64,000 nucleotides of DNA from positions 167,109-231,108 of IMG/VR virus record IMGVR_UViG_3300029911_000001, one strand, 5' to 3'. Below the pieces are notes generated by a model. That model was not told the origin of the DNA, ran no database searches, and worked only from the letters and a program-made list of their open reading frames with translations. The stretch's first letter is position 1, and each line of letters starts with the position of its first letter. The translations under genes and the position numbers were made by a program. Shown piece after piece: positions 19,961 through 34,128 of this stretch.

Positions 19961-20047
19961 GGGCAGATGCGTGAGTGGCTAAAACGGGCTGGCTGTAACC
20001 CAGCTTCCCTAGTGGATTCGGAGGTTCAAATCCTCCTCTGCCCACCA
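19961..20047 (+). tRNA. tRNA-Tyr(GTA)
   Basis: GGGCAGA/TCTGCCC acceptor, CT-GTA-AC loop, GTTCAAATC, encoded CCA. Confidence 0.92.
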
Positions 20048-20058
20048 AAATTGAATAC

Positions 20059-20146
20059 GCAAGTAAGGCGACTATCGGTTGGTCGCACCGGGCTGTAAAC
20101 TCGTTGCCCTAAAAAGCCGCTGGGGGTTCGACTCCCTCTACTTGCA
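20059..20146 (+). tRNA. tRNA-Tyr(GTA), second divergent copy
   Basis: GCAAGTA/TACTTGC acceptor, CT-GTA-AA loop, GTTCGACTC; imperfect anticodon stem, no encoded CCA. Confidence 0.72.
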
Positions 20147-20202
20147 CTTTCGTGACTACCGACCTCTTTAAGTAGAGGTATCTCTTGGAGGTCGGTAGGT
20201 TC

Positions 20203-20817
20203 ATGACATTTTTCACAGTGTATCGAACACAGAATCTGGTGAACGGGAGGTACTACTTCGGCGTCCATAAGACCAAAGACCCCTACGATGGGTACCTTGG
20301 GTCGGGTAAGATTTTGAAACGCGCAATAATAAAGTACGGTGAGCCAGCGTTCATCAAGAATCTCTGCTTCATCTTTGACAATCCAGAGGAGGCTTTCGCT
20401 AAGGAGTTTGAACTAATTGAAACGTACCGGCAAGATTCGCTTTGCTACAACCTGAGACAAGGTGGAAGTGGGGGGTTTGATTGGATAAACCGGGAAGGCA
20501 AAGCAGATTATTCAAGGGCAGCGAAAATGTCTCACGGAAGTAAAAGTAAAAGAGACCCCAACCACTATATGAAGATGGTTGAAGGTAGAAGGAAAAAGGG
20601 GTACGGAGTTGCCCCCCAGTTCATAGGCATCTGGTCAGGACGTAAGCATACATCTGAAACCAAAGCCAAGATGGCGTTGGCAGCAAGCTTGAGAGTTGGT
20701 GAAAAGAACTCGCAACATGGGACTTGTTGGGTAACAGACGGTGTTACAAATATGAAGGTGAAGCAATCAGACCTGTCCACGTACCTTGTGGGTAGTTGGA
20801 AACGAGGAAGAGTATAA
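20203..20817 (+). CDS. GIY-YIG (Seg-like) homing endonuclease inside the tRNA cluster
   Basis: VYRTQNLVNGRYYFGVHKT...YLGSG...KYG, YNLRQGGSGG, KHTSETKAKM. Confidence 0.85.
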   Translation: MTFFTVYRTQNLVNGRYYFGVHKTKDPYDGYLGSGKILKRAIIKYGEPAFIKNLCFIFDNPEEAFAKEFELIETYRQDSLCYNLRQGGSGGFDWINREGKADYSRAAKMSHGSKSKRDPNHYMKMVEGRRKKGYGVAPQFIGIWSGRKHTSETKAKMALAASLRVGEKNSQHGTCWVTDGVTNMKVKQSDLSTYLVGSWKRGRV

Positions 20818-21035
20818 TGCAAGTCGTTCAAACGCTGTTGGTACAAGGGAACGCGCAACAGGTAGCTTGGCTCAACGTAGACCCGCGAGTGAAGAAGGGC
20901 TCCGTTGTTACGCTCAAGGACGAACCTGAGAGCGGTCAGTGGGAAGTAGCCGAGCAGTACATGAAGCAGGAAGCTTCGGACATCCAGCGTGGATGGGGCA
21001 ACGACCTTCCCAAGTCGCAGCGGACTGAGCGGTAA
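20817..21035 (+). CDS. Hypothetical protein
   Basis: TAATG-coupled ORF. Confidence 0.6.
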   Translation: MQVVQTLLVQGNAQQVAWLNVDPRVKKGSVVTLKDEPESGQWEVAEQYMKQEASDIQRGWGNDLPKSQRTER

Positions 21036-21071
21036 TTAGCTTTTCCTGCTGTACGGTTTTTAGCTTTTTAC

Positions 21072-21156
21072 GCCCGGATGGCGAAATTGGTAGACGCGGC
21101 AGACTTAGAATCTGTTGTCGCAAGACGTGGGGGTTCGAGTCCCCCTCCGGGCACCA
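21072..21156 (+). tRNA. tRNA-Leu(TAG)
   Basis: GCCCGGA/TCCGGGC, CT-TAG-AA loop, long variable arm, CCA. Confidence 0.95.
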
Positions 21157-21279
21157 AGTTTGAACTTACTATCGTGAGACGATTGCACGCAGAACCCCGT
21201 GTGATTGAGTGAAAGCTGTGGCAGGCGAATTGACGCTAAGGCGATAAGTAACTCAGTCGTTCAAAGTTTTACAAAGTAT

Positions 21280-21369
21280 GCGCGAGTGGTGGAATTGGAA
21301 GACACAGCAGACTCAGAATCTGCCGTCCCGAAAGGGCAACTACGAGTTCGACTCTCGTTTCGCGCACCA
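21280..21369 (+). tRNA. tRNA-Leu(CAG)
   Basis: GCGCGAG/TTCGCGC, CT-CAG-AA loop, long variable arm, CCA. Confidence 0.92.
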
Positions 21370-21382
21370 AAAGTTTAGCAAG

Positions 21383-21464
21383 GCCGATGTGGTGGAATGG
21401 CATACACAGGACACTCAAAGCGTCCCGCGAAAGCATACGAGTTCGACTCTCGTCATCGGCACCA
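21383..21464 (+). tRNA. tRNA-Leu(CAA)
   Basis: GCCGATG/CATCGGC, CT-CAA-AG loop, one anticodon-stem mismatch, CCA. Confidence 0.82.
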
Positions 21465-21476
21465 AAGTTTAGTATT

Positions 21477-21551
21477 GCTCCTATGCTGGAACTGGCATAC
21501 AGCTCTATTGTACATTGCGGGGCGGTGTGATTCGACCCCCATACGTGAGCC
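21477..21551 (+). pseudogene. Degenerate Leu-type tRNA
   Basis: Leu-like D-arm TGCTGGAACTGGCATACAG, TTCGA, partial acceptor pairing; no recognisable anticodon arm. Confidence 0.4.
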
Positions 21552-21723
21552 TTTTATCTCTCACGTCACATTTTCCCGAGAACGCAGTATGGCTTGGTAA
21601 GCTAGTTCCTAGTTGGCTCAAACAACCGGTACTAGCAAGAGACCTGTTCACATTGAAATAAATTGGCATCCGCATACACTGGCATTCGTGTTTTTGAACT
21701 TTCATACCCTAATTGAGGGTGTG

Positions 21724-22266
21724 ATGAGACAATATCGAAACAAGTACAGTAAGGAAAGTCTGGAGCCCATCGTTAGGGACAGCCTATCGGTAGCTGGGGT
21801 GATTGATAAACTCGGATTGAAACAGGCTGGGGGTAATCATAGGCACTTAAAGTTACTTTTCAAAAGGTTCGAAATTGATACTTCCCACTTTACAGGAAGT
21901 ATATGGAACCGGGGGCTCACCGCAGAGACAGACAAACGAGTAAACCGAGGGATTAGACAAAAGTACACAGACGATGAGGCTTTCTGTGAAAATTCACTTC
22001 TTGGGAGTTCTCAACTTAAGCGGAGATTACTTAGGATTGGATGGAAGTATTGTTGTTCTCGTTGTGGGATTTCAGACTGGTTAAGTGAAAAGATTGCACT
22101 ACATCTTGACCATATAAATGGTATCAATGATGACAATCGGCTTTGTAACCTTAGATTTCTTTGCCCAAATTGCCATCAACTAACAGGGACATGGGGTTCG
22201 AGAAACGCGGTCGTGGTGAAACGGCATACACACTACCTTGAGGTGGTAGCGGGGGCAACCCCATGA
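21724..22266 (+). CDS. HNH endonuclease
   Basis: CSRCG...LHLDHING...NRLCNLRFLCPNCH; stop codon lies inside tRNA-Leu(GAG). Confidence 0.88.
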   Translation: MRQYRNKYSKESLEPIVRDSLSVAGVIDKLGLKQAGGNHRHLKLLFKRFEIDTSHFTGSIWNRGLTAETDKRVNRGIRQKYTDDEAFCENSLLGSSQLKRRLLRIGWKYCCSRCGISDWLSEKIALHLDHINGINDDNRLCNLRFLCPNCHQLTGTWGSRNAVVVKRHTHYLEVVAGATP

Positions 22267-22292
22267 GAGTTCAACTCTCTCCGACCGCACCA
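22207..22292 (+). tRNA. tRNA-Leu(GAG)
   Basis: GCGGTCG/CGACCGC, TT-GAG-GT loop, long variable arm, CCA. Confidence 0.92.
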
Positions 22293-22311
22293 AAGTTAAG
22301 TATTATACAGG

Positions 22312-22638
22312 ATGAAGCTCCATTGGAGTCAAGTCCTAGTTCGAAATAGATGCAAGGCACGTGAACCAGCGGCTCGACTTCGAACAGCTATGTTGGAAGC
22401 GGGGATACCACACAAGTGTGAACGCTGTGGGTGTCCTCCTGAATGGCGAGGCAAGCTGCTCGTACTTCAGATTGACCACATAGACGGCGACACTCTCAAT
22501 AACGAGCCTGACAATGTTCGCTTCATCTGTCCGAACTGTCACTCGCAGACACTAAACTTCGGAGCCAAGAACCGCAACCGGCTCACTGAAGCAGGGTTCG
22601 ATGATTTGTATGCTTGGGGAGGTGAGGACTATGAGTAA
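22312..22638 (+). CDS. HNH endonuclease
   Basis: CERCG...LQIDHIDG...NVRFICPNCHS. Confidence 0.88.
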   Translation: MKLHWSQVLVRNRCKAREPAARLRTAMLEAGIPHKCERCGCPPEWRGKLLVLQIDHIDGDTLNNEPDNVRFICPNCHSQTLNFGAKNRNRLTEAGFDDLYAWGGEDYE

Positions 22639-22816
22639 AAGCATCGTGTGCATTCTCGGCATTAGCACCTATGGTGGATTCGAAGCAAAGGACGCTACGC
22701 TGGATAAGCAAGCGGCTCATGAATGGCTGCAAACGGAAACAGCACCGGACACCATGGCTGTCTTCAAGCGGGTTGATTGGAATCTGGTACGGTCAAGCTA
22801 GGGCAGACAAAGTAAT

Positions 22817-22903
22817 GCCGGGATGGTGGAATTGGCAGACACATCGGCCTCAAAAGCCGCCGTTCGCAAGGACATGAGGGTTCGACCCCCTCTCCCGGCA
22901 CCA
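22817..22903 (+). tRNA. tRNA-Leu(CAA), second copy
   Basis: GCCGGGA/TCCCGGC, CT-CAA-AA loop, CCA. Confidence 0.9.
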
Positions 22904-22954
22904 AACAAATATTTGCAATAAATCTGTCCGAAACCGTGTTCACTCCGGTATACT

Positions 22955-23164
22955 GTGGCTGGAGGCTTTTGGATGCCAGCGACAGACCCCACCAAACACA
23001 TCAACGTTACGTTGCCCCATGAGGGCATCGAGTTCCTGACACGGGTACAAGTTTACCTGCGGGACAGGTATGGTCGTGCGGCCAGTAAAGCAGCACGAGC
23101 CAACGTCTCCATCGCTTTGAACTCCATCCGCAAGGAACTTGAAACAAAGGAGCCACAGGCATGA
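22955..23164 (+). CDS. Hypothetical protein
   Basis: 69 aa ORF downstream of TATACT. Confidence 0.5.
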   Translation: MAGGFWMPATDPTKHINVTLPHEGIEFLTRVQVYLRDRYGRAASKAARANVSIALNSIRKELETKEPQA

Positions 23165-23414
23165 GAGTATCCGTCTATCCCATTCTAATCGAAGAAGGCA
23201 AGCCACCCGCGTTCAAAGAAATCAAGCTGCCCAAAGGGTCTCGCATCCTCGGTGGGGTTCAAGCGTAAGGAAGGTCTCGGCTACTACTGGTCTCGGAACC
23301 GTTGGTGGCGGTTCGGTGTTGACGACTACCCCCCAGCCTACCGGGTGTTGTGCTCGAACTGCAACATGAGCGCGTATCGAGGCAATGGTGTGTGTATTCA
23401 CCAGCGAGGCAAGA

Positions 23415-23912
23415 ATGAACCTACCAACTGAAATTCGTAGCTTCTCTGATGACTGGAGCTTCCTGTCTAACTTCTACCCGTGCAAGGTGGTGTTGGATGG
23501 TGTGGAGTATAGTTCGGTGGAGCACGCATATCAGGCGGCGAAGACGCTGAACCTCAAGGAGCGGGAGAAGTTCCTGTACGCTGGCGTCACAGCCGGTCGT
23601 GCGAAGCGGATGGGCGATGCCATCAACAAGTCTGGCAAGCGTCGTGCGGACTGGCTGGAGGTCAACAAGCCTATCATGCTCGACCTGCTCAAGCAGAAAT
23701 TCTATCCGTCGATTTTACGTCGGAAGCTGCTCTGTACGTTCTCTGCGATTCTGATTGAGGGGAACTACTGGCACGACACGTGGTGGGGCGTGTGTGAAGG
23801 CACGTGCAAGGAGCACGGTCCCCATGAACCATATGGGGATAATATCCTAGGTCTGCAACTGATGGAGGTTAGGGCCTACTATGGAACAGGTGAAGGGTGT
23901 CTCAACCGTTAG
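23415..23912 (+). CDS. NADAR (YbiA-like) family protein
   Basis: FLSNFYPC, YSSVEHAYQAAK, LKQKF, LIEGNYWHDTWWG, NILGLQLMEVR. Confidence 0.92.
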   Translation: MNLPTEIRSFSDDWSFLSNFYPCKVVLDGVEYSSVEHAYQAAKTLNLKEREKFLYAGVTAGRAKRMGDAINKSGKRRADWLEVNKPIMLDLLKQKFYPSILRRKLLCTFSAILIEGNYWHDTWWGVCEGTCKEHGPHEPYGDNILGLQLMEVRAYYGTGEGCLNR

Positions 23913-24127
23913 GCTGCTACGCTCCTCCGCGACCTGCGAGGCACAGCGACTGGAGTTCCAGTTCCAAGGGCATTGATTGCGGCTTCCAGTCGGTCTATCT
24001 CAACCGCCAGTTCGTTTCGCAGCGTCTTGATGCCTCTGTCTTTCATGCCGGATAAAGCCTCGTGAGAAACGCGGAGGCGAACGATTTCAGCCGTAAGGTT
24101 GTCACGCAGGGTATTGATGTCCATCAC
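23909..24127 (-). CDS. Small basic protein, paralogue of 24243-24536
   Basis: DINTLRDNLTAEIVRL helix, Arg-rich tail. Confidence 0.65.
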   Translation of the reverse strand: MMDINTLRDNLTAEIVRLRVSHEALSGMKDRGIKTLRNELAVEIDRLEAAINALGTGTPVAVPRRSRRSVAA

Positions 24128-24242
24128 TACTCCTTTTACAATATCCAGTATACCTAACCATAGGTCAATGTAAAGTAAAATTTACCCCCATGAGAAAACG
24201 GGATGGAGCCGGATTCTCATGGGGGTTGGATCGTTCGTTGGT

Positions 24243-24536
24243 CTACGCCGCTTTAGACTGGGCTGCATTAACTTCCACAGTGGCGACAGCGGCCTTCTGC
24301 TTAGCCCAACGGGCCTTCTGCGAAGCAGAGATGCGTGCCCGAAGCTCGGGAGTCATCTCCCGACGGACACGGTGGATACCCTTCTTCTCACCCTTAGCAA
24401 TCATCGTCCGGGTCGTCTTGCGGTGCTTCACAGGGGCATGGTTGGGGACTTCGCTGGAGTTGGCGAGGGCATCGTAAGCAGCCTGAAGCCTTGCGATGTC
24501 GGTTGCGATTTCTGCACGTAACGATTCGATATTCAT
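24243..24536 (-). CDS. Putative nucleoid-associated small basic protein
   Basis: MNIESLRAEIATDIARLQAAYDAL...REMTPELRARISASQKARWAKQK; SD AGGAG. Confidence 0.7.
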   Translation of the reverse strand: MNIESLRAEIATDIARLQAAYDALANSSEVPNHAPVKHRKTTRTMIAKGEKKGIHRVRREMTPELRARISASQKARWAKQKAAVATVEVNAAQSKAA

Positions 24537-24680
24537 TGAGGTTTCTCCTGTTTTTCTATACGTTCTCCCTTTTGCGTATGGGTCTGTAACCGAGGGCTGT
24601 GGTGTGTTCAACCACACTCCCAGTGACTGTGTAGATACTTGGTGTACCACTAAGGTTGCCCCCTCCCGTTGTTTTTTGAA

Positions 24681-24716
24681 AAATAGTGTTGCATTTTTCG
24701 GACTATCGGGTATTAT
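24681..24716 (+). promoter_or_regulatory. Sigma70-like promoter of the Pro tRNA block
   Basis: AAATAGTG-TTGCAT-N16-TATTAT; ATG 6 nt downstream (leaderless). Confidence 0.75.
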
Positions 24717-24722
24717 GTAGAT

Positions 24723-24788
24723 ATGAAGTTCACGAGTCCAAACCCGTCGTTCCCACCGTGCCCTACCCTGCACGGGCCTGACCTCTAG
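24723..24788 (+). CDS. Putative Pro-rich leader peptide (21 aa)
   Basis: MKFTSPNPSFPPCPTLHGPDL; 6 Pro codons (CCA, CCG, CCA, CCG, CCT, CCT). Confidence 0.65.
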   Translation: MKFTSPNPSFPPCPTLHGPDL

Positions 24789-24941
24789 CGAGTTCAGCGT
24801 CCCGTGCGGCCTCGCCGGGATGTGAATGTGATTTTGATTTGGAGTCTAGCAAGTTCCCCGATAACACGCCCGAACCGTTCTCGCGAAAAGCGTACGGTTC
24901 GGCTCTCCTTCAAAAGACCATCCCGGTCACTATTGCTTTCT

Positions 24942-25018
24942 CGGAGAGTGGCCAAGATGGAAAGGCTCTGGTTTCGGGAACCAGAAATTCGTGAGTTCGA
25001 ACCTCACCTCTCCGACCA
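24942..25018 (+). tRNA. tRNA-Pro(CGG)
   Basis: CGGAGAG/CTCTCCG, CTGGT-TT-CGG-GA-ACCAG, CCA. Confidence 0.93.
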
Positions 25019-25030
25019 AACTTTTACCCT

Positions 25031-25654
25031 TCAAAGGAGGATCACTCCTTTATCCAACTCATCATGGTGGTTCTTACACAAGGCGATGAGGTTGCAAGGG
25101 TCATTGATTTCACCGACCAACGCAGTTGAAGGGAAAGCTCTGATGGGTTTGATGTGGCAACAGTCCACATGGAAGGTATACCCACATACTTGACACATAC
25201 GGGCTCTAACCTTGAAGAGAACCCCTCTAGCGTGTTCTCGGATTCGTTCTAATGGGCACGCCTTCTTGGTTCTTAGCGGGAGCAATGACATTGGGATGTA
25301 ATTACACTCGGGGCATCGAGTGGTAGAACGGTGTCTGTTTACCTTGAAGAAGAGGGTTCCACAAGAAGTACAGTTACGGGGTTTTGGTTTGTTTCGCGGG
25401 AATGTCGTTCGTGCCATATTGTACTTGGCACCACACGATTGGTTGCAGAACTTTTTTCTCTTGACTTGTTGAAACTTTGAGCGAGTCATCTCTTCAAGAG
25501 GTATCAAGATAGCAGTATCACACTGTAGGCAACGGGTTGGATTTTCATTGTACCCTTCCATTCGTTGCTGGGCTCTTTGTCGGTTCAACACGTTTGCATT
25601 TTTACCGGCAGCTTTGATTTGAGCCAATCTGGTTGAGCTTAGTTTGTTTTTCAT
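25031..25654 (-). CDS. HNH endonuclease between the two tRNA-Pro genes
   Basis: CQVCG...DCCHIKP...NLIALCKNHH; N-terminal Cys clusters. Confidence 0.85.
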   Translation of the reverse strand: MKNKLSSTRLAQIKAAGKNANVLNRQRAQQRMEGYNENPTRCLQCDTAILIPLEEMTRSKFQQVKRKKFCNQSCGAKYNMARTTFPRNKPKPRNCTSCGTLFFKVNRHRSTTRCPECNYIPMSLLPLRTKKACPLERIREHARGVLFKVRARMCQVCGYTFHVDCCHIKPIRAFPSTALVGEINDPCNLIALCKNHHDELDKGVILL

Positions 25655-25693
25655 TTTTCAACTCCCTGTTTACTGATTAGGTAGTTGAAAAAT

Positions 25694-25767
25694 CGGGGTG
25701 TAGCTGGAAGGTCAAGCCCGTGTTTTGGGAACACGAGACGAGGTTTCGATTACCTCCACCCCGACCA
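25694..25767 (+). tRNA. tRNA-Pro(TGG)
   Basis: CGGGGTG/CACCCCG, CGTGT-TT-TGG-GA-ACACG, CCA. Confidence 0.9.
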
Positions 25768-25780
25768 ATTTTGAACTATA

Positions 25781-25824
25781 TCACCGGAAGCAGCGGAGAG
25801 ATTCGAATCCTATCACCCCGACCA
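25781..25824 (+). pseudogene. Orphan tRNA 3' fragment
   Basis: ATTCGAATCC...CACCCCGACCA duplicates the 3' end of tRNA-Pro(TGG). Confidence 0.65.
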
Positions 25825-25836
25825 AGTTTGAAGTAT

Positions 25837-26000
25837 GCCAGCGACGACCGCTGAGCCTTTATAGCCCCTATCCGAGGGGTGTTGGGCTCATGTCACGCCG
25901 ATACCGTGCTCATCATGAGAGGGATACTCTATGAGTGTTGCGACGAACGGTGCCGACGACGCAAGTCCGGGGCAACTTCGGCCCCGCTAAGGGGCCGGAC
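25837..26000 (+). ncRNA. Candidate structured ncRNA
   Basis: Several GC-rich helices: CTCAT/ATGAG with AGAG/CTCT, GTCCGG/CCGGAC, GGCCCC-GCTAA-GGGGCC. Confidence 0.45.
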
Positions 26001-26125
26001 AAGTTTTGAACTTTGGTAGTATTATATTTAGTGGAGCCGGACTGCGGTAGTCCCACAGGACTGTACGACGTGAAGCCCTCCACACATCACACGGTCGTCG
26101 TCCGGGGTGTTAGGGGAGAAGTATC

Positions 26126-26593
26126 ATGAATTTTAAGGTGACTCATTGGCATCTCGCTAAGGGACGCGGCGATGGCGATAACACCGAAGTCGTAGTCCGT
26201 CTGGAAGAGTCATCGTGGTTCTGGCACTTCGCTGAGTTCATCGGTGAGCACGTATTCTTCACCATCTGCGATTGGTGCCACAAGGTTCCCCTCCCTAAGT
26301 TCGTATGCAACTGGGAACGCAACTGGGGCGGTGACAAGGAAGACGGCGTACATAAGCTGGAAGACTGGTATGGTGCCGACCTTGGTTGTCTCTGGCACGT
26401 CTACGTAGAGTCCCCCGTCCTTCAGTGGGTGTGGAAGCATAAGTTCATTGAACAGGCCACAGAGTTCCGTATGACCCTTGCCGAGGCCCGTGAAAAGTTC
26501 AAAGGCACACAGGCTTACAAGCTGGAGTGGATTGAAGAAGATGTCAAGCGTGACGCTGCATACGCTGCGGAACACCCCGAAGATAACGATTAG
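26126..26593 (+). CDS. Trp-rich hypothetical protein
   Basis: 155 aa, SD GGGGAG. Confidence 0.7.
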   Translation: MNFKVTHWHLAKGRGDGDNTEVVVRLEESSWFWHFAEFIGEHVFFTICDWCHKVPLPKFVCNWERNWGGDKEDGVHKLEDWYGADLGCLWHVYVESPVLQWVWKHKFIEQATEFRMTLAEAREKFKGTQAYKLEWIEEDVKRDAAYAAEHPEDND

Positions 26594-26608
26594 TCAGAAA
26601 TAATGCAA

Positions 26609-26645
26609 AAATAAGTGTTGCAAAGTTTTCTGACTTTGGTATTAT
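26609..26645 (+). promoter_or_regulatory. Sigma70-like promoter directly upstream of tRNA-Met
   Basis: AAATAAGTG-TTGCAA-N16-TATTAT. Confidence 0.75.
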
Positions 26646-26649
26646 TAGT

Positions 26650-26730
<81 letters not shown>

Positions 26731-26750
26731 AGAAGTAAAGTAAGGGTACA

Positions 26751-26849
26751 ATGGCAACTCAGGTTCTTCGCTTCAAGTGCGGCTTCTGCGATAAGGAAAT
26801 GCGTTCCCAAGGGCAACGCACCAAGCACGCAAAGGTCTGCACCAAATGA
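26751..26849 (+). CDS. 32-aa C2HC zinc-finger microprotein
   Basis: MATQVLRFKCGFCDKEMRSQGQRTKHAKVCTK = C-x2-C-x12-H-x3-C. Confidence 0.65.
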   Translation: MATQVLRFKCGFCDKEMRSQGQRTKHAKVCTK

Positions 26850-27012
26850 CCGTGGTAAATTGAAACTACTCTTCCGGGAGTAGGGTGGCTCAAATCCGCC
26901 CCATGGTCTATAACGCTGCACTAACAGAAGGACGACCCGATAGACTCACTGTTTTATAAGGAGTGTTCATGGGAAACATCGCTATGTCCTCACTCTTGCC
27001 CACTCGGGCAAC

Positions 27013-27047
27013 CTGAGTGAGTCCCTGAGTGAGTCCCTGAGTGAGTC
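27013..27047 (+). repeat. 12-bp tandem repeat x3
   Basis: CTGAGTGAGTCC x3, last copy imperfect. Confidence 0.92.
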
Positions 27048-27086
27048 TAAAGGGTCGCCGGTCTACCCGAATAATGACGGCTAAAA

Positions 27087-27248
27087 ATGAAACCACAAGT
27101 AAAGCTTACACGTCGTGAACGCCGGAAGTTGAACAAGCCGAAGAACAATGGCTGCAAGTATGTTTGCTTGACTTGCAACACACCATTCACCTTGAGCACT
27201 GCAATGGATGAGAAGCACTACTGCTCATCTAAGTGCCAACCGAAGTAA
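27087..27248 (+). CDS. 53-aa Cys-rich microprotein
   Basis: Basic N-terminus, CLTC...YCSSKC. Confidence 0.6.
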   Translation: MKPQVKLTRRERRKLNKPKNNGCKYVCLTCNTPFTLSTAMDEKHYCSSKCQPK

Positions 27249-27369
27249 GTTCCCGTTGAATCGGGCTTGGTACTGAAAACCAGCGAAGCAGGGTTGGTCT
27301 CTATGGGTGCAGTCTAGCGCATAGAGTTGGGAGAGGTCGTCGCGACGGCCAATCCCACCCCAGAGTTTT

Positions 27370-27426
27370 GGCGGGATAGAGGAGTTGGTTCCTTGACGGG
27401 CTCATAACCCGTAGACGGTCGGTTCG
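27370..27426 (+). pseudogene. 5' 57 nt of a tRNA-Met(CAT) ending at the T-loop
   Basis: GGCGGGA, D-arm, ACGGG-CT-CAT-AA-CCCGT, GTCGGTTCG; no matching 3' strand found nearby. Confidence 0.72.
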
Positions 27427-27842
27427 GAGGACATTCGGGAGGCTACTAGTGGCTCCCACCCGGAGGTCTTGTTGGCGAGAAGCCTCCCCCTCCGGTTTAT
27501 TTTGAGTGGTGCCGTTGGTCGCCTAGCGTCCGACATCCATGGGACAACATGGTATCGAGTCGCCGATGCGATTCGAGGCAACCTGTAGATGACGAAGAAG
27601 GTTATCCTGTGGTGTAGCCGGTAGGCGTTACAGGCAAGTCCCTTCGTCGGTATCATCCGGCACAATTTTTGTTGGGGTCTCACTACGAAGAGCGGCGGCG
27701 TAAGAGGGTGTGAGGCGAGAACCGAAGCATCGACCGTGCAGCGTACCGGATGAAACAGCCGGACTATAGTGGTGGCTTACAACAGTAATGTTGTCGGTGC
27801 GAGTGCTCATCCAAAGCCATGGAACCCCAAACAAAATAATTA

Positions 27843-27870
27843 TTGCAACTGTCTCAGAGTCGTGTATACT
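27843..27870 (+). promoter_or_regulatory. Sigma70-like promoter
   Basis: TTGCAA-N16-TATACT. Confidence 0.65.
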
Positions 27871-28056
27871 ACGTGTACGTTCTTGGATGTAAACCAAGGG
27901 AGTGGGCTCAGTTTCTTGCATCTGTAAATGCAAGTGGAGGTCGGGGCGGGTTGCCCGGTCAAGTTTCCAGCTTTAGAAGAAAGCTGGTGGTGGAGGGTGT
28001 CACGGGAAACCGTGACGCCCCCGTAGTTCAAATCTATCTTAGGAGAACAACGTCCA

Positions 28057-28254
28057 ATGGCAACAATCCTCGAATTCAACGGCTGTCCCAAATGGCGTGT
28101 AGTGAAAGAAGGGGAAGCAACCTTCCTGCACTGCCCGACGACCCAGACTCGCATCCCTGTCACTCTTGGCGAACTCCCCGAAGGTGCAAGCTTCGAGGAA
28201 GGTGATGAAAACCTCCCGACCGGTACCGAACTCGAAATCGCAGTCACGGTCTAA
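28057..28254 (+). CDS. Hypothetical protein
   Basis: 65 aa, SD AGGAG, biased codon usage. Confidence 0.7.
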   Translation: MATILEFNGCPKWRVVKEGEATFLHCPTTQTRIPVTLGELPEGASFEEGDENLPTGTELEIAVTV

Positions 28255-28261
28255 CCGAGAA

Positions 28262-28391
28262 ACGCTTGTAGCTCAGAATTACTCTGCGAGGCGGACGAGG
28301 AAGGTACCGACGACTTCGGCTAGACAGAGGAAGCCTAGAGCACCGGGGTTCTAATCCCGGAGGTCGCAGGAGAGGCCCTGCCAAGCGTACC
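28262..28391 (+). ncRNA. tRNA-like RNA with a ~60-nt insertion in the D-loop
   Basis: ACGCTTG/CAAGCGT acceptor, GCTC/GAGC D-stem, CCGGG/CCCGG anticodon stem, GCAGG/CCTGC T-stem. Confidence 0.65.
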
Positions 28392-28397
28392 TTTTAT

Positions 28398-28509
28398 GAG
28401 GGAATGGATAGACTCTGACTTCTCATCTGACATAAGACCAGTCAGGCAGCGTAACTCAGATGAGGCATCGGCCAGAGGAACGTCCGTGAAATCCCGCACT
28501 CCCTCTCCA
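28398..28509 (+). ncRNA. CCA-terminated tRNA-like RNA of unknown class
   Basis: GAGGGA/TCCCTC-T-CCA ends; internal CTCATCTGA/TCAGATGAG helix. Confidence 0.5.
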
Positions 28510-28563
28510 ATTTGTTTGCAACTTTTTCCAACTATCTGCGTCTAAGTAAGAGAACACATCCCC

Positions 28564-28614
28564 ATGAACCCCATCTACCCAACTCCCGGCGCACGATTTA
28601 CTGAGACCCTCTAA
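28564..28614 (+). CDS. Putative leader peptide (16 aa) upstream of tRNA-Phe
   Basis: MNPIYPTPGARFTETL; stop codon in the loop of ACCCTC-TAAGC-GAGGGT. Confidence 0.4.
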   Translation: MNPIYPTPGARFTETL

Positions 28615-28637
28615 GCGAGGGTGTTTCGTATTTCTGC

Positions 28638-28713
28638 GGCCTTGTAGCTCAGATGGTAGAGCACTACGCTGAAGACGTAGGTGCCGCGGTCTCGAAAGCC
28701 GCCAAGGCCACCA
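28638..28713 (+). tRNA. tRNA-Phe(GAA)
   Basis: GGCCTTG/CAAGGCC, CTACG-CT-GAA-GA-CGTAG, CCA; atypical T-loop. Confidence 0.88.
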
Positions 28714-29542
28714 ACTTTTTAATTCTTTTCTTCACAGCACTCCCCGACACCCCTAATAGTCTCCCCGTTGCTTCAAATCCAGTAGTGTCCACTTGTGCTT
28801 GGAGCAGGGCTAAGCTCGGCCATTCAATCTTGTCTTTATGGTTGAGTTTGGCTGCACAGGACTGGCACCGTTTATACCCGGACGTGATGGTGACTCCACA
28901 ACTGCACTGATTTGTCGGTCGTGCCCCCATTAGCCTAATAAAGTCTTTTCCATACTTAGCTGTCACATAAGTCAGGGTCGGCTCCATCTCTTTCTTTCCC
29001 AGTACAGACAGAACCCCACCAAACTGCGCTATTTTGGCTCGATTGCGGTTGTCCATCCACCCCTTCACTTCGATGTAGGCTCCTGTAGGGAGAATAAAGT
29101 CAGGGTAGAACTTGTGTGTCCTGCCTTCGAACGAGTAAGTCAACCCTAGTGTGTTCCGACTGAACCCCACTCCGTGGTCGAGGTTGTAGATGACCCACGC
29201 AAGCTCCCATGAAGAATCGCACCAGTAGCCTTTGTACCAGCCCTTCTTGCCCCGACCAGACCCAGCCCTTATCCCTCCGGTGTTAGGGTTCCATCGTTTA
29301 GGGCCACCATACTTCGCCTTCCTTTCATCCGGGCTCAGGGTATCAATAAATCTGCGGACAGAAATCGCGACGGCGACTGAGTTCTTTCTCACTCGGTCAT
29401 CTGTGTCCTTTGTCAGGCCACGGTTCCACGCGGCCCCACAGTGGTTGATAGGGGCTCCCTCGTGGCTGTATCGAATGTGATTCCTCAGGCCAAACTTGTG
29501 ACAAGATTTCCCGCACTGAGGGCAGTTGATATGTGTATCCAT
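28664..29542 (-). CDS. PD-(D/E)xK endonuclease with zinc fingers (homing-type)
   Basis: CDSSWELAW, FYPDF...YIEVKGW; N-terminal CPQC...H; C-terminal HTH-like segment. Confidence 0.75.
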   Translation of the reverse strand: MDTHINCPQCGKSCHKFGLRNHIRYSHEGAPINHCGAAWNRGLTKDTDDRVRKNSVAVAISVRRFIDTLSPDERKAKYGGPKRWNPNTGGIRAGSGRGKKGWYKGYWCDSSWELAWVIYNLDHGVGFSRNTLGLTYSFEGRTHKFYPDFILPTGAYIEVKGWMDNRNRAKIAQFGGVLSVLGKKEMEPTLTYVTAKYGKDFIRLMGARPTNQCSCGVTITSGYKRCQSCAAKLNHKDKIEWPSLALLQAQVDTTGFEATGRLLGVSGSAVKKRIKKLVALAAFETAAPTSSA

Positions 29543-30297: not shown

Positions 30298-33200
30298 ATG
30301 AAGATTCAGACACAAGATGTTAGTACAAGTGAACTAACACAGAAGAGTACCAAGAAACCAAAGAAGGTAAAAGAACCAAAAGACATACGCTACGTGTTCC
30401 GCAAGATGCTCAAGGGCATCGACCTGCCCTCACTCAAGCAGCCATGGATGATTCAGAAGGCGTTCCGCCTCATCAACACCCCTGAAGACCTACAGGCTTG
30501 GGTTGATACCGTTCTCAACGACACGTCCCGCCACGTTGAACTCAACGGTGTGCTCACTCCTGTTGTCGCCCTCGACACTGAGAACACAGGACTTGATACT
30601 CGCATCCTAGTTGACCGCGTGCTGCGTGACGACGGGTCGTGGGAACTCACATACGAAGTCAAGGTTGAGATTGCAGGTATTTGCCTATCCTCCGATGGTA
30701 TGGATGGCATCTATATCCCCCTCACCCATGAGAAGGAAGACCAAGACCTCCTCATCCCGGCGATCAACCTCGACCGTGCGAAGTGCGCTGAGATTATACA
30801 ATACCTCTTCGACCGTTGCCACCTTGTCTTCTACAACGCGAAGTACGACCGCGAAGTCATGCGGCTCACCATGGGCATCAATTTCCGCCCGTACCCTCAC
30901 TTCGAAGACGTACAGGTTCTCGCCTACATCAACGACCCGAAGGCTGACCTTGGCGACAAGGGTAAGTACACGGGCTCGTCAGGTGGTTTAAAGGCCCTGT
31001 CGAAGAACGTCCTTGGCCTATCACAGATTGAGCTTGACCAGATTGCCAAGGTGAAGTGCGAATACTGCCCGGTCACCGAGAGCCCGTTCTGCCACTGCAC
31101 GCCTGAAGAGAAGAAAGTACTAAGTGCGGCTGGTAAGAAGCACTCTCTCAAGAATCAGTATGTACCATTTCCATGGATACCCACTGACATCGCTCTCTGG
31201 TACGCCGCTGGTGACGCTATCTGCACGTGGCTGCTATGGAAGAAGATGTATGAGCTTGCACGCAGCCGCAAGACCTCGCACACCATCGACCATGAACTGG
31301 TGGAGTCCATCACTTGGACTGAACGTCAGCGTTGGTTTGTTGACACCGACCGTCATGCTCGTACAGTGAGGGGTCACTCCAAGAAGATTGGCGAGATGCG
31401 TCAGCAGCTTCGCAAGATGGCTCTGGAGATGGGCTACGAAGAGACCAAGCAAGCTGATGGGTCGGTGATGGAGGATGAGCAGTTCAACCCCGGCTCGTCG
31501 CCGCAGCTTCAGACTCTCTTCTTCAAAATCAAGGGCTACTCCGTCACCAAGTTCACCGATGCTGGTAACCCGTCGTGCGATGCTGAAGTGTTGGAAGACT
31601 TGTTCAAGGAACATCCAGACGATGACTTCCTGAAGCTGCTCATGCAGTACCGCGACTACATGGCTCTGCACCCCGGCAACCTCCGCTATGACCCCAACGA
31701 TCATACCGCTCGTATTTATCTCAAACAGAACGTCGTTGCTGGTGGACGCCTTGCTGCTGCTGGTGGAGACTTTGAAGTCGATGGTGGCTTCGGTCTGAAC
31801 CCGCAGGGCATCAAGAAGGTTGAGTCCTATCTGATGTGGAAGGTGAACGGAAACGTCCTCGACCCTGACCCTGAAGAAATCAACGACGAAGACATCATCG
31901 CGTACGAAGAGTCCGACCTGCATAAGTCCTGCTTCAACAAGGACAATAAGAAGGCACCGGGTATCATCAAGAACCACATCGGTAAGTACATGGGCTACGC
32001 CATTTGCTTGGTACCCTCATGCACGACCTGTGCGGACAAATATGGCATACTCATCCCGGATACCAAGATGGACGCTAACGAGGTCATCAACCTTCGTGTT
32101 CTGTTCCATGCTCCAAAGGGCTGGACGATGTTCTCGGTTGACTACTCGAACATCGAAATGCGTTGCGCTGCAAACGTATCGGGTGAGCCTGAATTCATCA
32201 ATGAGTTCCTTATCGGCAAGGGCGACTTCCACTCGCTTACTGCAAGCAAGGTCTTCCCTGAATTCACCGACCCCTCTACCTCTAAGGCTGTGCGTAAGAG
32301 CCTCCGTGACCTTGCGAAGATTATCAACTTTGCCCTGCTGTACGGCGGCACTGAGTTCACCATCTTCGAAAACATGAAGAAGAAGAAGCCGGACATCACT
32401 TGGGAAGAAGCCAAGGACATGGTTTCGAAGTATTGGGCTGGAGTTCCTGTGTTCTGGGAGTTCTGCCAGAGGAAGCAGAGCATCGCCAAGAACGAGATGC
32501 TTTGCAAGACGGCCACTGGTCGCATCATCAACTTCTCATCGGCCATGGAGACGCAGCACATCCGCGTCCCGACCGATGATGAGATGTCGAACTACTGGAA
32601 GTACCGCGAACTGATGAAGAAGTCAGAAGCGGCCAAGAAAGAAGGCGATGGGGATAAGTCGGGTACCTACCGTGCAATGGCTGACCGTCTGTGGAAAGAC
32701 CCGGACAGCGGAGTACGCAATGCCATGGACTACAACAAGTTCATGGGCAAGATTCAGCGCGTCTCGGTCAACGTCCCCTTGCAAGGTCTCGCTGGTGACT
32801 TCATGCGTATGGCATTGAACCGTATCCGTAAGTGGGTAGAGTCTGACCCTCTGGTGCAGTCCGTGTTCCATCTGCATTGCTCAGTTCACGACGAAATCGA
32901 CTTCATCGTCAAGAACGAGTACGCCCCGTTCGTCCTGCCTCGCATCACCCGGCTGATGAAGCTGCGTGCCCTGCATGAGAAGATGGGTTGGAAGGTTCCG
33001 ATTGAAGCAGACGCGGAGTACGGTCGTTCGTGGGACGTTGAGCATCACCTTACCGGAGACGAGGATCACAAGGCCGCTGCGTGGACTGAAATCAAGGGGA
33101 TGTCAACGTACATCCCAGACAACTGGGACATCGACACGCTCAAGAACCTCATCCGTGCTGTTGGCACTGGTGAAGAAGCACGTATCGAACGGGCGAAGAC

Positions 33201-34128
33201 CTTCCTCAAGGAGAACCTACACCCTCGTGCGTTCAATGCAGCCGGTACCTTCTTCGAAGCGAAGGATGACAGGTCCCGTAAGAAGGCTCTCATCACTGCG
33301 CTTCAGTTGGATGAGTTCTGGCGTATCGACAGCATCCCCGATAACGAGAACGACAAGCTGGAGACCCTTGCTCAGTTTGAGGGCCGCAATGGCCTCGGCC
33401 CGGATAACCGTGACCCGATGACGCCGGAGTTTGGCTACCTCGGTGCCATCCCTCTGACGGCTAAGGTCAAGCGTCCTACCATCGAGATTCTGGGAGAGCC
33501 TGTGGACGTATCGTTGGTAGACGTTATGGTCTCGCCCAGCACCATCACGGTGTCGGTGCCTGAACCTGAACCTGAGGAGCAGCAGCTTACCCTCGACCTG
33601 AGTACGGAGCCTGAAGAAGAGGAGTCCGTGGTTGAAGATGAGGAGCCTGAGGTTGAATTAGAACCTGAAGAGGTAGCTGAGTTAGAAAGCCAGTTGGAAG
33701 ACCGTGAGCCGGGGCCGGGTGAAGTCATCCCGGAAGGTATCAAGGTTGACATCGAACCGGAGCCGGTGGTCGAGCCCCCCAAGGCTATGGCTGCTGCCGC
33801 TGGTGCTGCGTCTCCTCCTGTTGAGGATAGCGTCTTCGCTGACATCCCTGTCGCTCGTCCGAAGAAGGTTGTCGAAGTTGTTCATGAGCCTGTTGCAGCA
33901 CCGCAGCCGACGCTGGAGATTCCTCAGGACGGCAAGCCTACCTACGAGATGGTTGACTTGGACGAACCGAATATCATCCGTCTTCGCTCGATGATGGGCG
34001 ACGGCCCCAACACCATCCGGGTCATCTACCGGGGGCGTATCAACTACCTCAAGAACAAGGCTCGTAACACTCCTCCCGAAGAGTACGTCGTAGCAGTCCA
34101 CGGAATTTCACAGGTATCGAAGTCATGA
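30298..34128 (+). CDS. Family A DNA polymerase with 3'-5' exonuclease
   Basis: LDTENTGLD, FYNAKYD, YAAGDA; DYSNIEMR (motif A), RDLAKIINFALLYG (B), VHDEID (C). Confidence 0.95.
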   Translation: MKIQTQDVSTSELTQKSTKKPKKVKEPKDIRYVFRKMLKGIDLPSLKQPWMIQKAFRLINTPEDLQAWVDTVLNDTSRHVELNGVLTPVVALDTENTGLDTRILVDRVLRDDGSWELTYEVKVEIAGICLSSDGMDGIYIPLTHEKEDQDLLIPAINLDRAKCAEIIQYLFDRCHLVFYNAKYDREVMRLTMGINFRPYPHFEDVQVLAYINDPKADLGDKGKYTGSSGGLKALSKNVLGLSQIELDQIAKVKCEYCPVTESPFCHCTPEEKKVLSAAGKKHSLKNQYVPFPWIPTDIALWYAAGDAICTWLLWKKMYELARSRKTSHTIDHELVESITWTERQRWFVDTDRHARTVRGHSKKIGEMRQQLRKMALEMGYEETKQADGSVMEDEQFNPGSSPQLQTLFFKIKGYSVTKFTDAGNPSCDAEVLEDLFKEHPDDDFLKLLMQYRDYMALHPGNLRYDPNDHTARIYLKQNVVAGGRLAAAGGDFEVDGGFGLNPQGIKKVESYLMWKVNGNVLDPDPEEINDEDIIAYEESDLHKSCFNKDNKKAPGIIKNHIGKYMGYAICLVPSCTTCADKYGILIPDTKMDANEVINLRVLFHAPKGWTMFSVDYSNIEMRCAANVSGEPEFINEFLIGKGDFHSLTASKVFPEFTDPSTSKAVRKSLRDLAKIINFALLYGGTEFTIFENMKKKKPDITWEEAKDMVSKYWAGVPVFWEFCQRKQSIAKNEMLCKTATGRIINFSSAMETQHIRVPTDDEMSNYWKYRELMKKSEAAKKEGDGDKSGTYRAMADRLWKDPDSGVRNAMDYNKFMGKIQRVSVNVPLQGLAGDFMRMALNRIRKWVESDPLVQSVFHLHCSVHDEIDFIVKNEYAPFVLPRITRLMKLRALHEKMGWKVPIEADAEYGRSWDVEHHLTGDEDHKAAAWTEIKGMSTYIPDNWDIDTLKNLIRAVGTGEEARIERAKTFLKENLHPRAFNAAGTFFEAKDDRSRKKALITALQLDEFWRIDSIPDNENDKLETLAQFEGRNGLGPDNRDPMTPEFGYLGAIPLTAKVKRPTIEILGEPVDVSLVDVMVSPSTITVSVPEPEPEEQQLTLDLSTEPEEEESVVEDEEPEVELEPEEVAELESQLEDREPGPGEVIPEGIKVDIEPEPVVEPPKAMAAAAGAASPPVEDSVFADIPVARPKKVVEVVHEPVAAPQPTLEIPQDGKPTYEMVDLDEPNIIRLRSMMGDGPNTIRVIYRGRINYLKNKARNTPPEEYVVAVHGISQVSKS

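What the first reader, a model, noticed from the sequence alone, without database searches (positions are those of the whole stretch)
27250..27836. About 590 nt of ORF-free, helix-dense sequence containing a tRNA-Met cut at the T-loop
Seen: a tRNA-Met(CAT) 5' part with the initiator-type GGG/CCC anticodon stem stops at GTTCG (27426) and runs into unrelated GC-rich helices. Closed domains follow: GTGCCG/CGGCAC (27509-27663, with inner GACGAAG/CTTCGTC and CCTGT/ACAGG) and TTTTGTTGGGGT/ACCCCAAACAAAA (27667-27836). No matching tRNA 3' strand was found. Established: giant phage ncRNAs (GOLLD, ROOL) lie beside tRNA clusters, and integrases often recombine in T-loops. Inference: either one large ornate RNA, several ~160-nt RNAs (6S-like size), or an insertion scar.
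Basis: partly seen in the sequence, partly recalled or inferred. Interest (0 to 1): 0.62.

Follow-up and report, generated by a model that had tools for sequence, protein, structure and literature searches.

The report
Truncated tRNA-Met gene in phage spacer
The stretch holds a dead, 3'-truncated copy of a tRNA-Met gene followed by about 400 bases of unconserved spacer inside the tRNA island of an uncultured peat jumbo phage; it is not a large ornate RNA and is ordinary.

Summary
A tRNA-Met(CAT) 5' part lies at 27370-27426 and breaks after GGTTCG, and every named helix is at its stated place.

The window comes from a 231-kb jumbo phage record from peat that carries 32 tRNA genes and a tmRNA.

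In the nearest diverged relative (L023, DNA polymerase 73% identical), the same small zinc-ribbon ORF is followed directly by an intact tRNA-Met with the same unusual GAGG D-stem. The fragment is therefore a truncated orthologue, that is, a pseudogene.

No 3' partner exists in the assembled genome. The break is bridged by contigs of three further runs, and the sequence is identical in three other assemblies.

The remaining 27427-27836:
- has no Rfam match, even at E up to 10;
- shows no similarity to about 60 related phage loci, although tRNAs and a neighbouring wcaG-like hairpin do align;
- gets no hit from a covariance model of its best-folding part;
- encodes no protein with relatives.

Folding is barely better than shuffles: z is -1.9 overall and -2.9 for 27505-27667 alone. 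The 12-bp closing helix is matched in 5 of 60 shuffles.

Verdict: a tRNA pseudogene plus lineage-specific spacer. A lineage-specific small RNA cannot be excluded, because no RNA data and no close relatives exist.

The parts
27087..27248 (+). Small Cys-rich (zinc-ribbon-like) ORF of 53 aa. It serves as the anchor for orthology.
   Evidence: tblastn finds a homologue in L023 at 5475-5606 (45% identity, E = 7e-5), directly upstream of an intact tRNA-Met. It has weak matches to the C-terminal parts of HNH-endonuclease families.
27249..27369 (+). Spacer with two strong hairpins (27299-27326 and 27328-27357). It is absent from L023, where the tRNA follows the ORF directly.
   Evidence: Fold of 27296-27366 gives z = -2.7, with 3 of 200 shuffles as good. 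L023 sequence.
27370..27426 (+). tRNA-Met(CAT) pseudogene. It keeps the acceptor 5' strand, D arm, anticodon arm with three G-C pairs, variable loop, T-stem 5' strand and TTCG. The rest of the T arm, the acceptor 3' strand and the CCA end are missing.
   Evidence: Not called by ARAGORN or Rfam. No 3' partner in the genome.
27427..27505 (+). Unrelated sequence joined to the broken T-loop. It has hairpin 27437-27457, then hairpin 27460-27495 followed by a TTTATTTT run, which looks like a terminator.
   Evidence: Fold, z = -1.8. A loose fold of 27366-27462 into a cloverleaf-like shape is no better than shuffles (z = +0.5).
27505..27667 (+). 'Domain d': a closed multi-hairpin fold ending in a T-run. 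It is the only part that folds clearly better than shuffles.
   Evidence: z = -2.87, with 2 of 200 shuffles as good. Covariance model R1 finds no second copy in 758 kb of related loci plus the window.
27667..27836 (+). 'Domain e': closed by a 12-bp bulged helix, but the fold is not better than chance.
   Evidence: z = -0.93. A helix this good appears in 5 of 60 shuffles.
27843..27870 (+). Promoter-like site TTGCAA-16-TATACT. It probably marks the start of the next transcription unit, so it bounds the region.
   Evidence: the only exact match in 64 kb, against 0.05 expected.
27907..28002 (+). Match to the wcaG RNA motif, in front of the conserved 65-aa ORF at 28057-28254. It is adjacent to the finding, not part of it.
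   Evidence: Rfam RF01761 scores 42.2 bits against a gathering score of 42. The first hairpin is conserved in L009, L023, L024, L027 and L029, with one covarying pair.

Best explanation
The region is a decayed piece of a phage tRNA island. The phage once had a second tRNA-Met gene just downstream of a small zinc-ribbon ORF, as its relative L023 still does. A deletion or replacement removed everything 3' of the TTCG in the T-loop and joined the gene to unrelated sequence. Without the acceptor 3' strand and the T arm, the product should be neither a substrate for normal tRNA end-processing nor chargeable, so it is a pseudogene (inference from established tRNA biology). The 400 bases that follow are lineage-specific spacer. 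They contain a few hairpins and two hairpin-plus-T-run sites that may stop read-through transcription, but nothing suggests a conserved RNA or protein. The D and anticodon stems still pair perfectly even though they differ from the L023 orthologue at most stem positions. I infer from this that the gene was functional for most of the time since the two phages diverged and that the truncation is recent.
For: Identity of the fragment:
- The tRNA part is real and tRNA-Met-like.
- Homology to six intact tRNA-Met genes ends exactly after GGTTCG (alignment A6).
- Positional orthology holds. The homologous small ORF in L023 (5475-5606) is followed at 5612-5690 by an intact tRNA-Met sharing the otherwise unique TAGAGGAG D-arm.
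- Gene order Pro, Met, Phe, DNA polymerase is conserved across relatives, which carry 2-4 tRNA-Met genes where this phage has one intact gene plus the fragment.

Missing 3' part:
- No 3' partner in 231 kb.
- Intact phage tRNA-Met genes with the expected CCGAC-TCCCGCC 3' end exist only in unrelated contigs.

The junction is real:
- The sequence is identical in three other assemblies.
- Contigs from three further peat runs bridge 27426/27427, and a fourth stops 2 nt short, with no differing letter in any of the four.

No sign of function in 27427-27836:
- Rfam empty at E up to 10.
- No blastn similarity in about 60 relatives, while tRNAs, the wcaG-like hairpin and the 65-aa ORF do align.
- Covariance model R1 finds nothing.
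- A six-frame tblastn of 27080-27950 gives only the small-ORF match.
- The minus-strand ORFs have no relatives among 5.8 billion proteins.
- TAG read-through opens nothing longer than 94 aa on the + strand or 122 aa on the - strand, and the genome uses all three stop codons.
- Folding statistics are weak.

Other tRNA-derived relics lie in the same island, at 26849-26911 and 28261-28391.
Against: - 27505-27667 folds better than 198 of 200 shuffles, and 27296-27366 better than 197 of 200.
- If the orphan minus-strand ORFs are discounted, the stretch from 26728 to 28056 is the longest ORF-poor tract in a genome that is about 91% coding.
- The pseudogene's stems show no decay. This could also mean that the fragment is still used for something.
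- No RNA data exist and there is no sequence variation at all, so selection cannot be measured.
- The nearest diverged relative is already 73% identical in its DNA polymerase. A fast-evolving RNA could therefore escape the searches.
Confidence: 0.72

Rival explanations
1. A lineage-specific small structured RNA of about 160 nt lies at 27505-27667. It would be bounded by the T-runs at about 27496-27504 and 27666-27672, possibly with further RNAs beside it. The tRNA fragment would be an unrelated neighbour.
For: - z = -2.87 for 27505-27667.
- T-runs follow the hairpin at 27460-27495 and the closing helix at 27658-27663.
- The same interval in related phages does hold real non-coding RNAs: a YrlA-like Y RNA and a conserved element of about 140 nt. 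The neighbourhood is therefore RNA-rich.
Against: - No homologue by sequence or covariance model in about 60 relatives, and no Rfam family.
- No promoter-like site lies upstream of 27505. The only one inside the region sits at 27627-27656, within the fold itself.
- One z-score of -2.9 among five or six segments tested is weak after correction for multiple tests.
Confidence: 0.12
2. This is an insertion scar. A mobile element, carried by an integrase, a homing endonuclease or a small hairpin element, landed in the T-loop and now occupies 27427-27836, with the bulged 12-bp inverted repeat as its ends.
For: - The break is in the T-loop.
- HNH and endonuclease genes lie close by, at 25031-25654 and 28664-29542.
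- A 70-nt hairpin element is present or absent 400 nt upstream in different assemblies. Small insertions or deletions therefore do occur in this island.
Against: - No tRNA 3' piece follows the supposed insert or occurs anywhere in the record.
- The inverted repeat bounds only 27667-27836, not the junction at 27427, and is at chance level.
- There is no second copy of any part in the genome.
- No integrase was seen among the neighbouring ORFs scanned.
- Integrase sites leave 3' duplicates, not 5' remnants (established knowledge).
Confidence: 0.09
3. This is the 5' half of a split tRNA. The 3' half would be encoded elsewhere, in the missing 26% of the genome, and joined at the RNA level.
For: The stems are perfectly kept. 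The record is only 74% complete.
Against: - No 3' half is present in 231 kb.
- No complementary leader could be looked for, because no 3' half is known.
- Split tRNAs and their splicing enzyme are known only from archaea (established knowledge).
- The orthologue in L023 is a normal continuous gene.
Confidence: 0.02
4. The region codes for protein on the minus strand, through the ORFs 27402-27683 and 27628-27933.
For: ORFs of 93 and 101 aa exist. One was called as a gene in a public assembly.
Against: - No family match and no relatives beyond the identical self-hit.
- The ORFs overlap each other in different frames, and the next one (27840-28247) overlaps the conserved + strand ORF.
- The translations are rich in Arg, Ser, Pro and Leu. 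The + strand is G-rich here (GC skew +0.14), which should deplete stop codons on the opposite strand (my inference).
Confidence: 0.03

Closest known systems
tRNA pseudogenes and truncated tRNA copies in the tRNA arrays of large phages
   Same: The fragment sits inside a tRNA island of a jumbo phage. Huge phages with dozens of tRNAs and tmRNAs are described in PMC7162821. It is a paralogue or orthologue of intact neighbouring genes, is missed by tRNA finders, and has endonuclease genes beside it.
   Different: The cut is clean, inside the T-loop, and the remaining stems show no decay. That points to a recent event rather than slow erosion.
GOLLD, ROOL and other large ornate phage RNAs
   Same: An ORF-poor stretch next to tRNA genes in a phage.
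   Different: There is no covariance-model match at E up to 10, no homologues, no covariation and weak folding statistics.
YrlA-type bacterial Y RNAs with a tRNA-like module (Rfam RF02553)
   Same: Related peat phages carry a YrlA-like RNA with a permuted tRNA-like module in this same Met-to-Phe interval.
   Different: This phage has none. The fragment here has normal, not permuted, tRNA order and lacks the T arm that YrlA keeps.
tRNA-gene attachment sites of integrative elements
   Same: The breakpoint lies in the T-loop region of a tRNA gene.
   Different: Attachment sites duplicate the 3' part and keep the gene intact. Here only the 5' part survives, no repeat is present and no integrase was seen.

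Membership tests
Functional tRNA gene (Rfam RF00005 / ARAGORN) | Seven-base-pair acceptor stem with a 3' strand and discriminator base | tested here: not met
   No complement of GGCGGGA follows within the region or next to any T-stem strand in 231 kb. The best nearby option, TCCCACC at 27454-27460, gives a fold no better than shuffles (z = +0.5).
Functional tRNA gene (Rfam RF00005 / ARAGORN) | T arm with a T-loop closed by the 3' stem strand | tested here: not met
   The sequence after GTCGG-TTCG is GAGGACAT and does not pair with GTCGG.
Functional tRNA gene (Rfam RF00005 / ARAGORN) | D arm and anticodon arm with a 7-nt loop | tested here: met
   GAGG/CCTT D-stem and ACGGG-CTCATAA-CCCGT anticodon arm.
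Functional tRNA gene (Rfam RF00005 / ARAGORN) | Score above the detection threshold of tRNA finders | tested here: not met
   No call by ARAGORN at default or lowered thresholds, and none by Rfam at E up to 10.
Bacterial initiator tRNA-Met | Three consecutive G-C pairs at the foot of the anticodon stem | tested here: met
   GGG/CCC is present. The closest intact relatives, L027 734-810 and L026 4800-4876, have it too.
Bacterial initiator tRNA-Met | Mismatch at position 1:72 | not testable with these tools
   Position 72 is missing from the fragment.
GOLLD, ROOL, 6S, group I/II introns, tmRNA, RNase P, self-cleaving ribozymes (Rfam 15) | Match to the family covariance model | tested here: not met
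   cmscan of 26700-28700 at E up to 10 lists none of them in 27250-27836.
YrlA-like Y RNA | Match to RF02553 or to model R2, built from the related phages' copies | tested here: not met
   No YrlA match in the region. In the window and the genome, R2 hits only tRNA arms and tandem-tRNA junctions, at 23 bits or less.
Integrase attachment-site scar in a tRNA gene | Duplicated 3' tRNA segment and an integrase gene nearby | tested here: not met
   No 3' segment. The neighbouring ORFs are HNH or other endonucleases, a primase-like protein and a DNA polymerase.
Conserved structured RNA (any) | Homologues with compensatory base changes | tested here: not met
   No homologue in about 60 relatives or in the phage database. 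All copies of this phage are identical. The test is limited by the lack of relatives between 73% and 100% identity.
wcaG RNA motif (RF01761), adjacent element | Score at or above the gathering threshold, and a position in front of a gene | tested here: met
   42.2 bits against a gathering score of 42, and 54 nt upstream of the 65-aa ORF. It is marginal, and only the first hairpin is conserved in relatives.

The most novel reading that the evidence does not exclude
The fragment and its neighbours might not be junk. Either 27505-27667 is a new lineage-specific phage small RNA, or the intact initiator-type anticodon arm, kept without an acceptor stem, serves as a decoy for host nucleases that cut tRNA anticodon loops.
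Probability: 0.06. Interest if true: 0.6.

Novelty: new member of a known kind. Interest (0 to 1): 0.15.

Why it matters
It matters little in itself. It is a worked example of how tRNA islands of jumbo phages turn over: one gene is lost by a clean truncation while relatives keep 2-4 tRNA-Met genes. It also warns that ORF-poor, GC-rich spacer next to tRNAs easily looks 'ornate' by eye. The comparison did show that this interval in related peat phages carries real non-coding RNAs, namely a Y RNA-like molecule, a conserved element of about 140 nt and a wcaG-like hairpin. Those are better targets than the stretch reported.

Tried and rejected
- Rfam at the gathering threshold and at E up to 10 gave nothing in the region.
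- blastn against 50,697 phage records hit only the intact tRNAs.
- Self-blast of the region against the whole genome found no second copy.
- A search for the missing T-stem plus acceptor 3' strand, allowing G-U pairs and one mismatch, gave only chance-level hits, none with a T-loop.
- A scan of IMG/VR for the expected 3' end found intact tRNA-Met genes only in unrelated contigs.
- Neighbour-protein searches in IMG/VR returned only identical copies.
- Anchoring on the DNA polymerase gave about 60 relatives, but none aligns to 27427-27836.
- An apparent shared 'GCAAGTCCC' word with a conserved block in relatives proved to be a forced alignment.
- The covariance model of 27505-27667 found nothing.
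- The Y RNA model built from relatives found nothing in this phage.
- A six-frame tblastn for decayed genes hit only the known small ORF.
- The minus-strand ORFs have no relatives.
- Reading TAG through, prompted by a CUA-anticodon tRNA elsewhere in the genome, opened no convincing ORF, and TAG ends 35 of 148 long ORFs.
- Reads: no run holding the stretch is on record as RNA, and contigs of four peat runs show no variant.
- ARAGORN at lowered thresholds gave only inconsistent noise.
I replaced it with the tblastn using X at stops.

Full report
**Context.** The window is bases 167109-231108 of an IMG/VR virus record of 231,108 bases, estimated 74% complete. Near-identical DNA occurs in at least 24 peat metagenome runs. 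ARAGORN finds 32 tRNA genes and a permuted tmRNA in the record. Eleven of the tRNAs lie in the window, grouped by amino acid: Tyr x2, Leu x5, Pro x2, Met, Phe. The finding lies between tRNA-Met (26650-26727) and tRNA-Phe (28638-28713). It is 2.5 kb upstream of a family A DNA polymerase gene (30298-34128) and has HNH and other endonuclease genes beside it.

**Observation.**
- The tRNA-like part (27370-27426) has an acceptor 5' strand, a D arm, an anticodon arm with CAT and three G-C pairs, a variable loop and the 5' strand of the T stem. It ends at TTCG.
- Its similarity to tRNA-Met is beyond chance. None of 2000 shuffles reached the observed score, and blastn against related phage tRNA-Met genes gave E = 2e-7.
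- ARAGORN and Rfam do not call it.
- The 231-kb record has no 3' partner. TCCCGCC never follows a T-stem strand, and a tolerant search gives only chance-level hits.
- The junction is not an assembly error. Three other assemblies are identical. Contigs of three further runs bridge 27426/27427, and a fourth stops 2 nt short; none of the four runs shows a single differing letter.

**'Helix-dense' is not supported.**
- Against dinucleotide shuffles the whole region has z = -1.9 and the opposite strand -1.05.
- By segment: 27250-27508 gives -1.1, 27664-27840 gives -0.9, and only 27505-27667 stands out at -2.87.
The longest perfect stem (8 bp) is the shuffle median.

**'ORF-free' holds for the + strand only.** The - strand has overlapping ORFs of 93 and 101 aa. 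They have no family match and no relatives among 5.8 billion clustered proteins, apart from one identical self-call.

**What the tRNA part is.** Anchoring on the DNA polymerase recovered about 60 related phage loci from IMG/VR and JGI metagenomes. These include a 463-kb phage (L009, 53% identity) and the nearest diverged relative, L023 (73%).
- Gene order Pro, Met, Phe, DNA polymerase is conserved. Relatives carry two to four tRNA-Met genes of several types in this interval.
- A six-frame tblastn showed that the small zinc-ribbon ORF just upstream of the finding (27087-27248) has a homologue in L023 at 5475-5606.
- That homologue is followed five bases later by an intact tRNA-Met (5612-5690; 40.5 bits in Rfam).
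- This tRNA shares the TAGAGGAG D-arm that otherwise occurs only in the fragment.
- In the alignment with six intact genes, homology stops exactly after GGTTCG.

The fragment is therefore a truncated orthologue. The anticodon stems of the two orthologues differ at most positions, yet ours pairs at 5 of 5 positions and L023's at 4 of 5. I infer from this that the gene was under selection for most of the time since divergence and that the truncation is recent.

Intact phage tRNA-Met genes with the matching T-stem and acceptor 3' end do exist in IMG/VR, but in unrelated contigs.

**What the rest is.**
- For 27427-27836, Rfam 15 gives no match at E up to 10. This covers GOLLD, ROOL, 6S, group I and II introns, tmRNA, RNase P, Y RNA and the small ribozymes.
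- blastn with short words finds nothing in the relatives, although the tRNAs, the first hairpin of the neighbouring wcaG-like motif and the 65-aa ORF do align at the same evolutionary distance.
- Covariance model R1, built from the best-folding segment, finds only itself in 758 kb.
- No decayed gene is detectable.
- Reading TAG through opens nothing longer than 94 aa on the + strand or 122 aa on the - strand. Reading TAG through was prompted by a tRNA with a CUA anticodon elsewhere in the genome. The genome uses all three stop codons.
- L023 has 1.1 kb of its own unique, ORF-poor sequence at the same place. The interval is therefore hypervariable across the clade.

Two hairpin-plus-T-run sites (27460-27504 and about 27646-27672) could end read-through transcripts. 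A promoter-like TTGCAA-16-TATACT at 27843-27870 probably starts the next unit, which carries the wcaG motif and the 65-aa ORF.

**Mechanism.**
- Shown: the tRNA gene is truncated in the T-loop; an intact orthologue exists in L023; the downstream sequence has no relatives.
- Inferred: a deletion or replacement event, perhaps promoted by the endonuclease-rich surroundings, removed the 3' quarter. The remnant should be neither a substrate for normal tRNA end-processing nor chargeable. The rest is spacer.

The same island holds other tRNA-derived relics, and a 70-nt hairpin element 400 nt upstream is missing from the window record. Both fit a picture of rapid local turnover.

**Rivals.**
- A lineage-specific small RNA at 27505-27667 remains possible. 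The fold z-score, the bounding T-runs and an RNA-rich neighbourhood in relatives speak for it. It has no homologues and no upstream promoter-like site, and the statistic is weak after multiple tests.
- A mobile-element insertion would need the 3' tRNA piece beyond the insert. That piece is absent, and integrase sites leave 3' remnants, not 5' ones.
- A split tRNA cannot be excluded while 26% of the genome is missing. It has no precedent outside archaea, and the orthologue is continuous.
- Minus-strand coding is unsupported.

**Comparison with known kinds.** The feature works like, and is best filed as, a tRNA pseudogene in a phage tRNA array. Huge phages with many tRNAs and tmRNAs are described in PMC7162821. 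It fails every tested defining feature of the ornate-RNA families, of YrlA and of attachment-site scars. The adjacent wcaG motif is a known candidate cis-regulatory RNA described from marine metagenomes and T4-like cyanophages (PMC2864571). Its match here is at the threshold.

**Verdict.** The sequence-level observation is correct and the structural claim is overstated. The best explanation is a recently truncated tRNA-Met pseudogene followed by lineage-specific spacer (confidence 0.72). Interest is low. No RNA data exist and there are no relatives between 73% and 100% identity, so a young lineage-specific RNA cannot be ruled out.

Noticed in passing
window 26952-26955 (compare L022 5106-5175): The three other assemblies checked across this point, and contigs of at least three of the four peat runs laid, carry a hairpin element of about 70 nt here (GGCCTGAGG...CCCTCAGG, flanked by TTTT on both sides). 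The window record lacks it. The element weakly resembles the 3' part of a conserved element of about 140 nt in relatives (E = 0.36).
   Followed up: partly
L047 645-758, L045 102-224, and L044, L048, L050, L052, L054, L062 (alignment A7): Related peat jumbo phages carry a YrlA-like Y RNA in the Met-to-Phe interval. It has a permuted tRNA-like module (T arm, closed acceptor hairpin, D arm) inside a long stem. Rfam RF02553 scores it 35-37 bits, below the gathering score of 69. Eight pairs show compensatory changes. It is absent from this phage's 231 kb.
   Followed up: partly
L009 7129-7260, L027 1085-1230, L029 7295-7451, L026 5074-5193: A conserved non-coding element of about 140 nt has a GNRA-capped hairpin and a terminal hairpin plus T-run, with 10 covarying pairs in four sequences. 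It has no Rfam match.
   Followed up: partly
window 27907-28002: A wcaG RNA motif, known from marine metagenomes and cyanophages, scores at threshold in a peat jumbo phage, in front of a conserved 65-aa ORF. Only its first hairpin is conserved in relatives (L009, L023, L024, L027, L029), with one covarying pair.
   Followed up: partly
window 28261-28391: A tRNA-like cloverleaf missed by tRNA finders. It has a perfect 7-bp acceptor stem (ACGCTTG/CAAGCGT) and a 5' end identical to tRNA-Phe over 13 nt. About 60 nt are inserted in the D region, a T-arm-like hairpin (GGTTCTAATCC) sits in the anticodon-arm position, and a last arm has a non-canonical loop. Fold z = -2.2. Similarity to tRNA-Phe was reached by 19 of 2000 shuffles.
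   Followed up: partly
window 26849-26911: A mini tRNA-like element with a 7-bp acceptor stem (ACCGTGG/CCATGGT), one hairpin and a T arm with the loop CTCAAAT. Similarity to the neighbouring tRNA-Met T arm was reached by 26 of 2000 shuffles.
   Followed up: partly
window 28448-28510: A possible further decayed tRNA-Phe copy (GTAACTCAGATG...). The similarity is marginal, reached by 92 of 2000 shuffles.
   Followed up: partly
window 27012-27047: Three exact tandem copies of the 12-mer CCTGAGTGAGTC. They sit within an imperfect 25-nt inverted repeat (26926-26950 and 27040-27064).
   Followed up: no
genome G000:C1 67323-67396 and 71374-71774 (outside the window): A tRNA with a CUA anticodon (called 'Pyl' by ARAGORN; a possible amber suppressor) and a permuted tmRNA. 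TAG still ends 35 of 148 long ORFs, so there is no sign of genome-wide recoding.
   Followed up: partly
L009 6769-6846, L023 5856-5927, L027 870-960: An odd, conserved tRNA-Met-like gene with an aberrant D region. In L023 it scores 26.5 bits in Rfam, below threshold. No counterpart was found in this phage.
   Followed up: no
window 19961-28713 and relatives L009, L023, L026, L029, L048, L050, L062: The tRNA genes are ordered in blocks by amino acid (Tyr, Leu, Pro, Met, Phe). This order is conserved upstream of the DNA polymerase gene across the clade, while copy numbers and spacers vary freely.
   Followed up: partly
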